The notes: a model not told the origin generated them from the sequence alone. 64,000 nt of DNA from Vitrella brassicaformis CCMP3155 (GCA_001179505.1 CDMY01000748.1:124001-188000); one strand, 5' to 3'. Numbered from the stretch's first letter, positions 24,404-63,637 are shown. Numbers and translations: made by a program.

Positions 24404-25028
24404 ATGTCGTCGTCTGCGAGCAGCCTGGCTGGCCGTGCGGTCGGTCTTTTTGAGGGCCGCAATGTCTACGCCGACGGCGGCAGGGGGGTGTACATCTTGG
24501 TGCAGGAGATGGAGGGCGGGCTGGACGGCCGCAGAGAGCGGCGGTTTATACGCAAGACCGACTACGGCAAGATCAGCCTCTTCGACGACGTCAGCCTGGA
24601 CTTGCGGCAGCTGGCCAGCAGGTAAAGTGTGCACTCGCCGATGCGACGATGCATGTCAGCTCACAGGAAGATCTCCCTGTCTGTGTGTCAGTGTGGGTGT
24701 GGCCAATGGCAATGGCGCCACACTGCGGCGTCAGGATGTTTCATCGCCAACCACAGCAGCCGGCCAGGGCGGCGGCGGTGATGTGTTCACTCGGTCGCCG
24801 TCGGGTGTGTTTTATCAAGTGAAGCGGCCGGGCAACGGACCCAAACCCACACGTCACCAGACCGTCGAGACCGACGTCATCTGGTGGCGTGACGACTTCG
24901 ACGGCCGTCCGATGTCACAGTGCACACGAGGGCCATCATCACGACGACCAGGGTGGCGAATCTTTGCATCACTCGTGTGGCTGGTGTCACCTGTTGGTAC
25001 GACAAACGCACAGATCTGTCAGGTCTGA
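24404..25028 (+). pseudogene. Family gene 1: VGxFEGR domain + truncated FKBP-like exon
   Basis: Exon 1 (24404-24621) encodes MSSSASSLAGRAVGLFEGRNVYADG..., followed by a phase-2 intron. Exon 2 from 24692 encodes VGVANGNG...SPSGVFYQVKRPGNGPKPT...WRDDFDG. FKBP similarity stops at about 24906, where the duplicated block begins. Confidence 0.65.
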
Positions 25029-26600
25029 AGACAGGAAACCTTCAAGCCTCTCTGGGCTCACCTTTGGGGGGGGAGAGAGAGTCCCTCCCATGCTAAGCTC
25101 GCATTCCCCCGATCGGCTTTTTGCAGCGTTCGTTCGTTCGTTCGTTCGTTGCAGCGCAAGGTGGGTCAGAGAGCCTCGGACGACAAGCAAATATGTAGAT
25201 CTGAGCCAGCAGCTTCACCAGTGTGTGTGCCTGTGTGGTGTTCGGGCAGGCAGCACCGTTCATCTGACCGTCATCCATCCACAGCACCAGCCAAGCCCCG
25301 CGGACCGGCCAGCGGCGCACAGGTACGCAACCAAGAGCAAGCACTGACACAGCCAAGCAGCAGAAACAGACAGACTCACTCACCAAGTCATTTGCTTCTT
25401 ACACTCCCGGTGTGTGTGTGTGTGCAGGCGCAATGAGTGACAGACTGGTGGACGTCGGTGTGCTGGAGTTCAGCCGCAACGTGCTGGAGGACCCTGCCCA
25501 GCCGGGCGAGTACTTCTACGAGCTCAACGCGTTGGTTCCCGACCGCCCCAAGAAGCGGATCTATCTGCCGCTGGACATCTGCCGCACGAGCGTCAACTTC
25601 TACACCAAAGACAGGAATGGCCGCGAATCGCTGCTGCCGAAGGGAGTGCTGCCGAATGAGACGTAGGTGCTGCACAGACACACAGACGGTGGGTTCTCAT
25701 TGGGGCTGTGTGTGTGTCAGTGTGGGTTTGACCAATGGCAATGGCGCTACACTGCGGCGTCAGGAGGTCTCATCGCCAACCACAGCAAGTGGCCAGGGCG
25801 GCGGCGGTGATGTGTTTATTCGGCTGCCGTCGGGTGTGTTTTATCAAGTGGTGCGGCAGGGCCGTGGGCCCAAACCGACCCGTGACCAGACCATCAAGGT
25901 CGACTACATCGGGTGGGCCGACGACTTCGACGGACAAGACAAAATATATGATCGCCGTGGGGGGGTGGATCGTGTGTCTCAGTGCGCTGAGTGGTTCCAG
26001 GAGGTCTTCACTGACATGCGTGTGGGTGAGGTGCGGCGGGTCATAGCGCCGGCCGGATTGAGTGCCACTGGGCAGGAGGAATACATCGAGTACAGGCTTT
26101 TGGCCATCCTGTGAGCACTGCCTCCTGGTGTGTCCGCTGTGTGGGCGTTGGTGGCGGTGGCGCCATCCAGCAGCGATGTCTGATTTTTGTAGCCAGCTGT
26201 TCGGTCGTGTACACCACTCTATGGCCCTGCTGCTGCATCGGTGTGTCTACCTTGGCTGCTGCACACATCCACCCACACACATCGATGTGTGTGTGAGTGC
26301 ATTGTCTGTGGTGTCGTCGCTGTATCTCTCGGCGACCGATGGACGTGATTGTGATGTGATGGCTTCATCCACCCAGGAGCCAGACCTGCCATAGCCAATG
26401 TGACGTTCGTTTGGTTTTGTTTGTCCATGAGGCCTTTGGACCCCAAGACGCCTTTTTGCCTGTCTGACGGTCTGCCTGCCTATATGGCCTCTGTGGTATC
26501 CGTGGGTGTCCTTCGCGTGTGTTTTCTGACTGGACAAAAGAAACCGATTCAATGTGATCTCTGGACCGTCTGTGTCCTCCACGTCACGTCGCATCGCACT
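24907..26600. repeat. Inverted segmental duplication, arm A (partner 61865-63637)
   Basis: Continuous reverse-complement similarity covering upstream non-coding DNA, both exons, the intron and the 3' flank. Confidence 0.9.
25433..26114 (+). CDS. Family gene 2: VG-type domain + FKBP-like domain
   Basis: Exon 1 (25433-25662) encodes MSDRLVDVGVLEFSRNVLED..., followed by a phase-2 GT-AG intron. Exon 2 (25721-26114) encodes LPSGVFYQVVRQGRGPKPTRDQTIKVDYIG...EW...MRVGEVRRVIAP...YIEYRLLAIL*, an FKBP-fold signature. Confidence 0.8.
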
Positions 26601-26714
26601 TGTCGTCTGCTCATCGCATCAGCTAGGCCAAAGTGAAGCAGCCATGCACAGTAAATTAACGAGAGAGAGAGAGATCATCCCTGCTGAAAAAACCGCTCGG
26701 GATTGAACACAGAG

Positions 26715-61257: not shown

Positions 61258-61864
61258 CCACCAGTGTGCTGATTTTCACACCTGGGCCCGTGACTTCCCG
61301 GCCTCCATGAACGGTCGCTGTAGTTACCCACTTCCCCCCTCCCACCTGTCGACCACCGATGAGTGTGCATTGCGTGGCGTGATAGTGACCTGGCTGGCGT
61401 GTCGACCGACAGTCATGCCATCCTGCCTGCCTGCCTGCCTGTGGATACCTGCCGGCCGGCCGACGCATTTTTACGTCGAAATAGACAAACGTTTTTCGTC
61501 AGATCCCCACTGACTGACTGATCGATCGACGGCCGTGTGGCTGCCTGCCGGCTGGCTGGTGTCTCCCCTGTCTGCTGGTGTGTCGCATCTCTGGCTAACT
61601 TGTCTGTCTCTGAGTCGTGTGCAATGCTGCTAGAAGTACTGCTGCACTGTTGGGTGCTGGCTCTGTTAACGATACTCGTGGGACGGGCGGGCGGGCGATT
61701 GACGGACACAGCTCAGCGAGAATGGGTGTATTCCACCGGTTGGCAAGCAGAGAGGAGAGCCAAGGAGGGGAGACGATCCGCTGATAACGCCATACAGCGA
61801 TGAGGAAAGAGTTGGGCAATGCAGGCAGGCAGACAGCAGGGCAAACAGGGCAGACCACAAGTGT

Positions 61865-63637
61865 GCACGTGATGCGACGTGATGTGGGAAACACAGTTAT
61901 GTTGAATGACACACACGGGGCAGAGACCAAGTTGAATCGATTTCCCTTTGTCCGGTCAGAGAACCCACACACACCGAAGGACACCCACCGATACCACAGA
62001 GGCCATATAGGCAGACAGACCGACCATCAGACAGACAAAAAGGCGTCTTGGGGTCTTACAGGTCTCATGGACAAACGAAATCAAACGAACGTCACATTGG
62101 CTATGGCAGGCCTGGCTCATGGATCATGGATAAAGCCATCACATCACCTCACGTCCATCGGTCGCCGACAGATACAGCGACGACACCACAGACAATGCAC
62201 TCACACACACATCGATGTGTGGGTGGATGTGTGCAGCAGCAAAGGCACACACACCGACACAGATGGCCAATGCGCGCACACTGACACCCTATAGCAACTC
62301 GAGCAGGGGCATGCAGCAGAATAAACCGACGCAGCAGCTGGCCACAAATCCAGACATCGCTGCCGGACGGTCTCACCGCCGCAAAGGCACTCACAGCGGA
62401 CGCACCAGGGGGCAGTGCTCACAGGATGGCCACCAGCCTATACTCGAGGTAAGCCTCCTTTCCACTGTAGGTCAGTCTGGCCGGCGCGATGACCCGCCGC
62501 ACCTCACCCACACGCATGTCAGTGAAGGTCTCCTGGACCCACTCAGCAACAAAGTCAGACACACAACGCACCAGCCCACGGTATCCATATCTCTTGTCTT
62601 GGCCGTCGAAGTCGTCAGCCCACGCGACCTCGTCGATCTCGACGTCCTGGTTCTGTGTCGGTTTGGGCCCATTGCCCGGCCGCACCACTTGATGAAACAC
62701 ACCCGACGGCGACCGAGTGAACACATCGCCGCCGCCGCCATGGCCGGCTGCTATGGTTGGTGATGAGACCTCCTGACGCCGCAGTGTGGCGCCATTGCCA
62801 TTGGCCACACCCACACTGACACACAGACACACAGGCACACAGACACACAGCCCCAATGAGAGCCCACCGTCTGTGTGTCTGTGCAGCACCTACGTCTCAT
62901 TCGGCAGCACTCCCTTTGGCAGCAGCGACTCGCGGCCGCTCCTGTCCTTGCTGTAGAAGTTGACGCTCGTGCGGCAGATGTCCAGCGGCAAATAGATGCG
63001 CTTCTTGGGGCGGTCGGGGACCAATGCGTTGAGCTCGTAGAAGTACTCGCCCGGCTGGGCAGGGTCCTCCAGCACATTGCGACTGAACTCCAGCACACCG
63101 ACGTCCACCAGTCTGTCACTCATTGCGCCTGCACACACACACCGACAGTGTAAGAACCAAATGACCTGGCGAGTCTGTCTGTTTCTGCTGCTTGGCTGTG
63201 TCAGTGTTTGCTCTTGTTTGCGTACCTGTGTGCCGCTGGCCGGTCCACGGGCTTGGTTGGTGCTGTGGATGGATGACGTTTGTCAGATGAACGGTGCTGC
63301 CTGCCCAAACACCACACAGACGCACACTGGTGAAGCTGCTGGCTCAGATCTACATATTTGCTTGTCGTCCGAGGCTCTCTGACCCACCTCGCGCTGCAAC
63401 GAACGAACGAACGAACGAACGCTGCAAAAAGCCGATCGGCGAGGGAATGCGAGCTTAGCATGGGAGGAACTCTCCTCTCCCGCGGAGCCCAGAGAGGCCT
63501 GAAGGTTTCCTGTCTTCAGACCTGACAGATCTGTGCCTTTGTCGTACCAACAGGCGACACCAACCACACGAGTGATGCAAAGATTCGCCGCCCTGGTCGT
63601 CGTGATGATGGCCCTCGTCTGCACTGTGACGTCGGAC
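61865..63637. repeat. Inverted segmental duplication, arm B (partner 24907-26600)
   Basis: Reverse-complement match to arm A. Confidence 0.9.
62419..63123 (-). CDS. Family gene 7: VG-type domain + FKBP-like domain (paralogue of gene 2)
   Basis: Exon 1 (63123-62894) is 230 nt, the same length as in gene 2, followed by a phase-2 intron. Exon 2 (62815-62419) is an intact FKBP-like exon. Confidence 0.82.

What the first reader, a model, noticed from the sequence alone, without database searches (positions are those of the whole stretch)
24404..63123. Seven-member modular gene family built by plugging an FKBP-like terminal exon onto different N-terminal modules via a constant phase-2 intron
Seen in sequence: FKBP-fold last exons start at 24692(+), 25721(+), 27208(-), 35533(-), 37631(+), 57601(-) and 62815(-). 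By exon-length arithmetic the preceding intron is phase 2 in all seven. Five are joined to a short VG-type domain and two to BTB/POZ cassettes. The 3' flank after the stop (TGTGAG(C/G)ACTGCC(T/C)CCTGGT...) is shared by genes 2, 5 and 7, so acceptor, exon and 3' flank move as one unit. The copies are interspersed among housekeeping genes (INTS9, LHC, NUP98). Established: identical intron phase at module borders is the hallmark of exon shuffling. Inference: this is a lineage-specific combinatorial family in which an FKBP-derived binding module is coupled to interchangeable signalling or oligomerisation heads.
Basis: partly seen in the sequence, partly recalled or inferred. Interest (0 to 1): 0.82.

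Follow-up and report, generated by a model that had tools for sequence, protein, structure and literature searches.

The report
Shuffled FKBP-like exon gene family
The seven genes are real local members of a family of at least 150 copies in the alga Vitrella brassicaformis, in which one exon for a stripped-down, fast-changing FKBP fold is spliced through a phase-2 intron behind different gene fronts, so it is probably a home-grown set of target-binding modules.

Summary
All seven FKBP-like exons lie at the stated places, and every preceding intron is phase 2. Five follow a small "VG" head and two follow a KCTD-type BTB head. Genes 2, 5 and 7 share the 3' flank. Public protein records with transcriptome sources confirm the junctions of genes 2, 7 and 6.

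Corrections:
- The family has at least 150 exon copies genome-wide, not seven.
- The scan has reported it before on other pieces of this genome.
- Two window copies are broken: gene 1 is truncated and gene 4 is frameshifted.
- Genes 2 and 7 are a whole-gene duplicate pair.
- The shared "3' flank" begins with a 5' splice site. The stop codon overlaps a GT donor, so the exon is symmetric (phase 2 on both sides). A transcript contig shows such a donor in use.

The fold is FKBP (pLDDT 93, TM 0.80 to Legionella Mip), but Pfam's threshold is not met and the 80s loop is shortened. Heads are under purifying selection (dN/dS 0.05-0.48). Tails run at 0.7-1.47, and the excess amino-acid change is concentrated at positions equivalent to the old pocket. 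Trees reject co-inheritance of heads and tails.

Function is inferred, not shown: a variable binding module, with the BTB members as possible Cul3 adaptors. The assembly gap touches no member.

The parts
24404..24621 (+). Gene 1 head exon (VG type a), 218 bases, ends in a phase-2 donor AG|GTAAAG
   Evidence: Sequence. The head family aligns with 19 paralogues.
24692..25028 (+). Gene 1 FKBP-like last exon, truncated. Family homology ends near 24944, where the 1.6-kb segment shared with gene 7 begins.
   Evidence: The read-through tail is present in MMETSP protein P0007.
25433..25662 (+). Gene 2 head exon (VG type b), 230 bases, donor AC|GTAGGT, phase 2
   Evidence: The junction is seen in P0002, P0006 and P0007.
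25721..26114 (+). Gene 2 FKBP-like last exon, intact. The stop TGA (26112-26114) overlaps CT|GTGAGC.
27737..28396 (-). Gene 3 exon 1 with a KCTD-type BTB domain (5' end uncertain). The intron after it is phase 0.
27520..27656 (-). Gene 3 exon 2, 137 bases, ends in phase 2
27263..27454 (-). Gene 3 exon 3, 192 bases, donor AC|GTAAGG, phase 2
26836..27208 (-). Gene 3 FKBP-like last exon of the 'SMREGE' subtype, with an ordinary TAG stop. Its tail subtype differs from that of the genes with the most similar exon 3.
35567..35712 (-). Gene 4 head exon (VG type c), 146 bases, donor AA|GTGAGT, phase 2
35051..35533 (-). Gene 4 FKBP-like last exon. The acceptor is at 35533 or, more likely, 35497. A 7-base deletion near 35176 shifts the frame, so this is probably a pseudogene.
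36365..37051 (+). Gene 5 exon 1 with a KCTD-type BTB domain, 687 bases. The intron after it is phase 0.
37128..37264 (+). Gene 5 exon 2, 137 bases, ends in phase 2
37334..37555 (+). Gene 5 exon 3, 222 bases, donor AG|GTGAGT, phase 2
37631..38138 (+). Gene 5 FKBP-like last exon with a membrane-helix-like segment in its linker. The stop overlaps CT|GTGAGG, and the 3' flank is shared with genes 2 and 7.
57687..57865 (-). Gene 6 head exon (VG type a), 179 bases, donor AG|GTGGCT, phase 2
   Evidence: P0008 is identical to the model.
57034..57601 (-). Gene 6 FKBP-like last exon, the most divergent copy, with an ordinary TAG stop
62894..63123 (-). Gene 7 head exon (VG type b), 230 bases, phase 2. It is a whole-gene duplicate of gene 2.
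62419..62815 (-). Gene 7 FKBP-like last exon, intact. The stop overlaps CT|GTGAGC.
   Evidence: P0001 differs by one residue.
55780..56079 (.). Assembly gap, outside every family member

Best explanation
The seven genes are local members of a large family that appears restricted to Vitrella brassicaformis. Its unit is one exon that encodes a linker and a shortened FKBP-fold domain.

Shown here:
- The exon is entered through a phase-2 intron.
- Its stop codon overlaps a GT donor (xx|GTGAG or xx|GTAGG), so the exon is symmetric, phase 2 on both sides. It can be the last exon, when read-through of the donor gives an immediate stop. It can also be internal, when the donor is spliced.
- The family grows by whole-gene duplication (genes 2 and 7) and by tandem exon duplication (an array 28 kb beyond the window, with one VG head and at least seven FKBP exons).
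- Tails are exchanged between genes with unrelated heads, at least partly by short-tract gene conversion.
- Heads are under purifying selection. Tails evolve at a dN/dS near 1, with a fixed framework and variable positions concentrated where FKBPs have their ligand pocket.

Inferred:
- The domain is no longer a prolyl isomerase. It serves instead as a diversifying protein-binding module.
- BTB-headed members would work as Cul3-type substrate adaptors.
- VG-headed members carry a small beta-strand head of unknown role.
For: Family size: at least 150 matches in the genome and 47 in 200 kb of contig C1000.

Fold:
- The family profile hits Mip-type FKBP structures at E 5e-7.
- The AlphaFold model has pLDDT 93.4.
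- Foldseek gives TM 0.80, probability 1.0, to Legionella Mip.

Intron phase:
- All seven window junctions are phase 2 by arithmetic.
- Head exons elsewhere end in a donor that coincides with the first in-frame stop.
- A frame-blind acceptor rule gives phase 2 in 26 of 32 non-redundant introns.

Support from public protein and transcript records:
- P0008, whose sources include MMETSP, is identical to the gene 6 model.
- P0002 (MMETSP) and P0001 (JGI) show the gene 2/7 junction.
- P0010 and P0027 (NCBI gene models) and P0013 (JGI) show VG-head junctions elsewhere.

Stop codon as donor:
- In the array at C748:215.4-219.0 kb, seven successive exons each end at xx|GTGAGT.
- JGI transcript contig L051 matches the genome at 100% in blocks. 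These show two 64-67-base introns removed. The first starts at a GA|GTAGGA that overlaps the 'stop' of an upstream tail.

Selection:
- Across six paralogue pairs, heads have dN/dS 0.05-0.48 and tails 0.7-1.47.
- In a counting site test, 31 of 95 sites are constrained and 11 show an excess of amino-acid change. That is 5 of 13 pocket-equivalent sites against 6 of 82 others (Fisher p 0.006).

Head-tail exchange:
- Head labels need 14-16 changes on the tail tree, where 3-4 is the minimum.
- AU tests reject single clades.
- Gene 7 matches a BTB-type tail on another contig at 11 of 11 informative sites over 46 bases (permutation p 0.002).

Restriction to Vitrella: in a profile word search, every hit down to E 4e-19 is Vitrella or an unlabelled short contig. 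The next hits are ordinary FKBPs at E 6e-5.
Against: - No binding partner, Cul3 interaction or loss of isomerase activity has been tested. Function rests on evolutionary pattern and analogy.
- A mean dN/dS near 1 also fits partial decay, and two of the seven window copies are broken.
- Tail dS exceeds head dS in five of six pairs. Part of the tail divergence therefore reflects exchange or mutation rather than selection, which weakens simple dN/dS readings.
- The site test is a parsimony count on a recombining family, and only one site survives Bonferroni correction.
- The pocket mapping rests on an HMM alignment plus a residue list recalled from memory.
- Restriction to Vitrella was tested only among proteins of about 57-180 residues.
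- The splicing of the two BTB genes in the window is inferred, not seen in RNA.
Confidence: 0.72

Rival explanations
1. There was one ancient fusion per architecture, followed only by whole-gene duplication. The head-tail disagreement comes entirely from concerted evolution (gene conversion) among tails, not from exons moving to new genes.
For: - Genes 2 and 7, and gene 5 with its upstream paralogue, are whole-gene duplicates.
- Tails cluster by contig rather than by head.
- A short conversion tract is detectable.
- The exchange boundary in the gene 2/7 pair lies inside the exon, not at the intron.
Against: - Unrelated heads (BTB and VG) carry homologous tails, so at least one true shuffling event is needed.
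- In the array, a complete acceptor-plus-linker unit interrupts another FKBP exon.
- Tandem exon arrays exist.
- No high-identity donor was found for the divergent blocks of genes 2 and 7.
Confidence: 0.18
2. The family is mostly decaying, selfishly duplicated DNA. A dN/dS near 1 reflects relaxed constraint, and the tails have no current function.
For: - Tail dN/dS is 0.7-1.47.
- Genes 1 and 4 are broken.
- Truncated or frameshifted copies occur on C1000.
Against: - 31 of 95 sites are significantly constrained, and M72, G75, E76 and L99 are invariant across 34 copies.
- Most copies keep an open frame.
- Several are transcribed.
- Variable sites are not random. They are enriched at pocket-equivalent positions.
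Confidence: 0.08
3. The tails are still working FKBP prolyl isomerases or chaperones, expanded for protein folding.
For: - The FKBP fold is present, and equivalents of F36, D37 and W59 are conserved.
- UniRef labels one member as holding a PPIase FKBP-type domain.
Against: - The tails score below Pfam's FKBP_C threshold (13-15.5 bits against 21.1).
- The region after the last shared motif is about 9 residues shorter than in Mip, where the 80s loop with Y82 lies.
- Equivalents of Y26, V55 and I56 are among the most variable sites.
Confidence: 0.05
4. Head exons and FKBP exons are separate genes, and the modular architecture is a modelling artefact.
For: NCBI's annotation calls one array member as a separate small protein (P0009).
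Against: - Protein records with transcriptome sources join head to tail exactly as modelled for genes 2, 7 and 6. NCBI and JGI records do so for paralogues.
- Most tails lack a start codon at their 5' end and begin at an AG acceptor.
Confidence: 0.02

Closest known systems
Mip-type FKBP domains (Legionella Mip, Burkholderia BpML1, E. coli FkpA)
   Same: Same fold, a five-stranded sheet wrapped round one helix (TM 0.80). Profile E-value 5e-7. Equivalents of F36, D37 and W59 and the 'G-x-x-R' strand after the helix are conserved.
   Different: - Below Pfam's threshold.
- The 80s loop is shortened by about 9 residues.
- The pocket rim is hypervariable.
- The domain is encoded on one symmetric exon and present in at least 150 copies in one genome.
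- It is fused behind BTB or VG heads.
Expanded BTB substrate adaptors of Cul3 ligases (MATH-BTB of nematodes and grasses; KCTD proteins)
   Same: A BTB domain joined to a second, variable domain. There is a large lineage-specific expansion in clusters, with fast amino-acid change in the non-BTB domain (analogy; PMC4091423 describes the grass expansion).
   Different: - The variable domain is an FKBP fold, not MATH or Kelch.
- The BTB is of the T1/KCTD type.
- The same variable exon also serves non-BTB heads.
- Cul3 binding is untested.
Classical exon shuffling of symmetric modules (phase 1-1 modules of animal extracellular proteins)
   Same: One domain per exon, the same phase on both sides, tandem duplication, and insertion behind unrelated partners.
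   Different: - The phase is 2-2.
- With a GT(A/G)(A/G) donor, this phase makes the unspliced donor read as an immediate stop. The same exon can therefore be terminal or internal.
- The organism is an alveolate alga.
Multigene families diversified by segmental gene conversion
   Same: Mosaic similarity between copies and a detectable short conversion tract. Tails are more diverged than the rest of the gene.
   Different: No expression-site or switching mechanism is known here. The evidence for conversion is a single tract plus indirect signals.

Membership tests
FKBP-type peptidyl-prolyl isomerase domain (Pfam PF00254) | Sequence match above Pfam's gathering score | tested here: not met
   The best tails score 13-15.5 bits against a cut-off of 21.1. 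Four of eight pieces give no hit.
FKBP-type peptidyl-prolyl isomerase domain (Pfam PF00254) | Homology to solved FKBPs at profile level | tested here: met
   A profile of 34 copies hits Mip-type FKBPs at E 5e-7 to 1e-6. About 20 distinct FKBP chains score below 1e-4.
FKBP-type peptidyl-prolyl isomerase domain (Pfam PF00254) | FKBP fold | tested here: met
   The model has pLDDT 93.4. Foldseek gives TM 0.76-0.82, probability 1.0, to many FKBPs.
FKBP-type peptidyl-prolyl isomerase domain (Pfam PF00254) | Intact ligand and catalytic pocket (FKBP12 Y26, F36, D37, V55, I56, W59, Y82, F99; list from memory) | tested here: inconclusive
   Equivalents of F36, D37 and W59 are conserved. Equivalents of Y26, V55 and I56 are hypervariable. 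The 80s-loop region is about 9 residues shorter. The mapping is by HMM alignment, not by superposed coordinates.
FKBP-type peptidyl-prolyl isomerase domain (Pfam PF00254) | Prolyl-isomerase activity | not testable with these tools
   Needs an enzyme assay.
BTB/POZ domain, T1/KCTD type (Pfam PF02214) | Sequence match above Pfam's gathering score | tested here: not met
   13.3 and 14.9 bits against a cut-off of 21.4 for genes 3 and 5.
BTB/POZ domain, T1/KCTD type (Pfam PF02214) | Homology to solved BTB domains at profile level | tested here: met
   A profile of 19 paralogous heads hits SHKBP1 (1.4e-5), the Kelch13 BTB (4.2e-5), KCTD13-family adaptors (1.1e-4) and KCTD16.
Cul3 substrate adaptor | Binding of the BTB domain to Cul3 and of the second domain to substrates | not tested
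   No complex prediction or experiment was done. The reading is by analogy only.
Exon-shuffled symmetric module | Same intron phase on both sides of the module exon | tested here: met
   Phase 2 on entry in all seven window genes and in 26 of 32 introns elsewhere. Phase-2 donor at the stop, used in transcript L051.
Exon-shuffled symmetric module | Module found behind unrelated partners, with head and module trees in conflict | tested here: met
   BTB and VG heads. AU p 0.0003 and 0.022. Gene conversion could produce part of the conflict.

The most novel reading that the evidence does not exclude
The FKBP exon is a self-contained plug-in cassette. It carries its own acceptor, and its stop codon doubles as a splice donor, so it can land at a gene's end or in any phase-2 intron. 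Together with tandem duplication and gene conversion among at least 150 copies, it would form a germline diversity system. That system would generate target-recognition domains for ubiquitin-ligase adaptors and other heads, an innate-immunity-like or symbiosis-related recognition repertoire in an alveolate alga, built on a fold not known to serve as a variable scaffold.
Probability: 0.3. Interest if true: 0.8.

Novelty: new variant of a known kind. Interest (0 to 1): 0.62.

Why it matters
If the reading holds:
- It shows exon shuffling at work on a large scale in a protist, with a simple mechanical trick: a phase-2 donor that reads as a stop lets one exon be terminal or internal.
- It adds the FKBP fold to the short list of scaffolds recruited as fast-evolving recognition modules, alongside MATH, F-box-associated and leucine-rich-repeat domains.
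- It gives a testable entry to what a free-living relative of apicomplexan parasites needs so many variable binding proteins for.

I found no paper on it. Searches for Vitrella with FKBP, with BTB and gene-family expansion, and for chromerid with exon shuffling gave nothing relevant.

Tried and rejected
Restriction to Vitrella therefore rests on the word search alone.
The genome-wide tabulation covers only contig C1000:1-200000, 30 short loci and the window.
- Joined (spliced) protein models were not built or searched. Every search was exon by exon, by reference. Full-length BTB proteins of about 500 residues were therefore out of reach of the length-limited word search.

Searches that gave nothing useful:
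- A Pfam scan of 120 open frames upstream of C1000 tails gave only isolated hits: one weak RING, TLDc, DUF7788 and gyrase B. I could not confirm the RING, SET or RBR heads that earlier notes mention.
- The VG head has no relative by PDB profile, Foldseek or the ESM Atlas.
- A search for a high-identity gene-conversion donor for the divergent blocks of genes 2 and 7 found none above 82%.

Methods judged weak:
- A first acceptor heuristic (longest AG-free stretch) mis-picked sites inside AG-poor coding linkers. It was replaced.
- Sliding best-match windows suggest a mosaic but are not a test.
- Four of the five triplet tests mainly reflect non-homologous upstream sequence in the third sequence.

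
Full report
**Source and gap**

The window is contig C748:124001-188000 of a 72.7-Mb assembly with 1064 contigs. Proteins identical or nearly identical to those it encodes are labelled Vitrella brassicaformis CCMP3155.

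I tested the gap first. The run of N at 55780-56079 lies 958 bases beyond the stop of gene 6, in low-complexity DNA. It is inside no exon or intron of any family member, and no family fragment abuts it. No claim depends on it.

**The observation**

A tblastn with the gene-2 exon finds the seven claimed copies and nothing else above noise. A family HMM gives the same result.

Reading the sequence, each exon starts at a canonical AG at the stated coordinate. Gene 4 is the exception: paralogues and a frame-blind rule favour 35497 over 35533, which is 36 bases away and in the same phase.

The upstream exons end at GT donors after 218, 230, 146, 179 and 230 bases from their ATG (genes 1, 2, 4, 6, 7). 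In the BTB genes the upstream exons are 192 and 222 bases and are entered with one base. All seven introns are therefore phase 2.

Public protein records support three junctions:
- P0008, held by NCBI and by the MMETSP transcriptome among other sources, is identical to my two-exon model of gene 6, including the split AG|T serine codon.
- P0002 and P0007 (MMETSP) and P0001 (JGI) show the gene 2/7 junction.

The junctions of genes 1, 3, 4 and 5 are inferred from canonical sites, frame compatibility and conservation in paralogues.

- Genes 2 and 7 are whole-gene duplicates. About 1.6 kb aligns, including promoter region, 5' intron, head, intron, tail and 3' flank.
- The gene 1 tail loses family homology at about 24944. 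That is exactly where the segment shared with gene 7 begins, so a duplication truncated it.
- The gene 4 tail has a 7-base deletion relative to its nearest paralogue and is frameshifted.
- Gene 5 has a close whole-gene paralogue 48 kb upstream (89% identical BTB exon). Both carry a strongly hydrophobic, membrane-helix-like segment in the tail's linker.

**Scale**

The own-genome search reached the 150 matches it scores, so that number is a lower bound. In 200 kb of contig C1000 the HMM finds 47 tails.

BTB heads like those of genes 3 and 5 give at least 120 exon matches, and by my reading of the coordinates about 28 lie roughly 1.2 kb upstream of a tail. VG heads of types a and b are smaller families, mostly lying directly upstream of tails.

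The scan has already reported this family on other pieces of the genome. I re-tested the points I use.

**What the module is**

Pfam's FKBP_C model matches only below threshold. A profile of 34 copies hits Mip-type FKBP structures at E 5e-7. The AlphaFold model has pLDDT 93.4 and superposes on Legionella Mip at TM 0.80 with probability 1.0.

The fold claim is therefore sound, but membership of the enzyme family is not established:
- The stretch after the last shared motif is about 9 residues shorter than in Mip, where the 80s loop lies.
- The equivalents of Y26, V55 and I56 vary freely.
- The equivalents of F36, D37 and W59 are conserved.

The pocket residue list is from memory.

**The heads**

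The BTB assignment is below Pfam's threshold for single sequences. A profile of 19 paralogous heads supports it, hitting SHKBP1, KCTD13-family, KCTD16 and Kelch13 BTB domains.

VG heads of types a and c form one alignable family. Type b joins it weakly, and intermediate sequences exist (P0022 and P0024). The VG head models as four strands and a short helix (pLDDT 82). It has no significant structural or sequence relative.

**The 3' flank is a splice donor**

With a phase-2 boundary, a donor GT(A/G)(A/G) read without splicing gives xxG followed by TGA, TAA or TAG, an immediate stop.

- Head exons across the sample end in just this way.
- In an array at C748:215.4-219.0 kb, a walk that picks acceptors without regard to frame yields a VG head followed by seven exons. 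Each encodes a linker plus an FKBP domain (one of them truncated, one a fusion), and each ends at xx|GTGAGT. The eighth has ATGAGT and stops.
- On C1000 the tails end ATAGA|GTAGGAG.
- The 918-base JGI transcript contig L051 matches C1000 at 100% as 71239-71352 and 71420-72212. Its first 14 bases equal 71161-71174, the end of the upstream tail.
- So an intron that begins at that 'stop' has been removed. One caveat applies: the 14-base end also occurs at other tails. The copy 64 bases upstream, with GT...AG borders, is the parsimonious source.

The exon is therefore symmetric (phase 2 on both sides) and can be terminal or internal. In the window, P0002 and P0001 end at the stop, so there the site acts as a stop.

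**Phase beyond the window**

A rule that takes the first AG at least 30 bases from the donor and preceded by 25 or more AG-free bases places the acceptor in phase 2 in 26 of 32 non-redundant head-to-tail introns. One third would be expected if the choice were random. The known exceptions are mis-picks.

Not every intron of these genes is phase 2. The first intron of both BTB genes is phase 0.

**Do heads and tails share a history?**

- On a tree of 73 tails, the four head labels need 14-16 changes, where 3-4 would suffice. Tails group more by contig than by head.
- AU tests reject trees that hold together the tails of VGb-headed genes (p 0.022) and of BTB-headed genes (p 0.0003).
- Gene 3 has an 'SMREGE'-type tail, while the genes with the most similar exon 3 have 'TDMRVGEVRR'-type tails.
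- The 3' flank of about 100 bases is shared between tails behind BTB and VG heads.

So exchange is real. How it happens is less clear.

- In the gene 2/7 pair the divergent block starts inside the exon and runs about 100 bases into the flank.
- Tail dS exceeds head dS in five of six paralogue pairs.
- One triplet shows a 46-base tract in which gene 7 matches a BTB-type tail on another contig at 11 of 11 informative sites (permutation p 0.002).

These point to gene conversion inside the exon as well as movement of whole cassettes. The array also contains an FKBP exon interrupted by a complete acceptor-plus-linker-plus-FKBP unit.

**Selection**

| Pair or analysis | Head dN/dS | Tail dN/dS |
|---|---|---|
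| Genes 2 and 7 | 0.05 | 0.92-0.99 (same dS, 0.21) |
| Five further pairs | 0.14-0.48 | 0.48-1.47 |

- A parsimony count on 71 tails gives an overall dN/dS of 0.83. Of 95 sites, 31 are significantly constrained and 11 show an excess of amino-acid change.
- I fixed the pocket-equivalent positions from the alignment before counting. Five of these 13 positions are in the excess class, against 6 of 82 others (Fisher p 0.006).
- This is an approximate method on a recombining family. Only one site survives Bonferroni correction.

**Distribution**

A profile word search returns only Vitrella-labelled proteins and unlabelled short contigs (JGI, ENA, MMETSP) down to E 4e-19. It then jumps to ordinary FKBPs at E 6e-5. 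'Vitrella only' is therefore provisional.

**Verdict**

- The module, the constant phase and the combinatorial use are real.
- The family is far larger than seven.
- Local growth is mainly by whole-gene duplication.
- Two copies are dead.
- The shared flank is a splice donor.
- Exchange involves gene conversion.

Function is inferred: a binding module, with the BTB members as possible Cul3 adaptors. I rate this a new variant of known kinds (exon shuffling, and expanded adaptor families with a fast-evolving recognition domain), with interest 0.62.

Noticed in passing
window 24944-26560 (+) and 61960-63620 (-): An inverted segmental duplication of about 1.6 kb carries genes 2 and 7. Identity is 94-98% in the promoter and intron regions but only 74-80% in the FKBP exon body and the first 100 bases or so of its 3' flank.
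   Followed up: yes
window 26720-26835 (-): A partial second copy of the C-terminal third of gene 3's FKBP exon lies just downstream of its stop. It is not in a splice-compatible frame and is probably a relic of a tandem duplication.
   Followed up: partly
window 37680-37740 (+); L006: The tails of gene 5 and its paralogue encode a conserved hydrophobic stretch of about 20 residues (Kyte-Doolittle mean 2.69) between the acceptor and the FKBP domain. This would put the BTB and FKBP parts on opposite sides of a membrane.
   Followed up: partly
proteins P0002, P0007 (MMETSP Transcript_35944): Both isoforms have gene 2's head and tail start. They then continue as another paralogue's tail, L004-like in P0002 and gene 1's truncated tail in P0007. 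They are either assembly chimeras between paralogues or real recombinant genes in the sequenced strain.
   Followed up: no
protein P0006 (JGI): A variant of gene 2 in which an internal GT...AG inside the FKBP exon is removed, which shifts the frame of the C-terminal half.
   Followed up: no
L041 (C1000:104400-106400, +): Four tails lie in tandem at a spacing of about 500 bases with no head between them. Each ends at a stop that overlaps a GT donor. They could form a multi-domain gene or serve as alternative last exons.
   Followed up: partly
L034 (C1000:38965-39627, +) and L045 (C1000:140297-140665, -): Head and tail lie in one open frame without an intron. In the second case the VG head is cut down to about 16 residues. 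These are possible intron-loss or fusion variants.
   Followed up: no
window 25127-25150 (+) and 63395-63420 (-): A (GTTC)n microsatellite sits in the shared upstream region of genes 2 and 7.
   Followed up: no
window 29914-30801 (+), 41845-42846 (+), 48680-51046 (-): Unrelated genes lie between the family members: a weak, sub-threshold match to the metallo-beta-lactamase superfamily, an ion-transport protein, and a NUP98-type nucleoporin with autopeptidase and FG repeats.
   Followed up: partly
G000:C130:50597-51184 (+): Two VG type-b head copies lie where the tail search listed no FKBP exon. They may be heads without tails.
   Followed up: no
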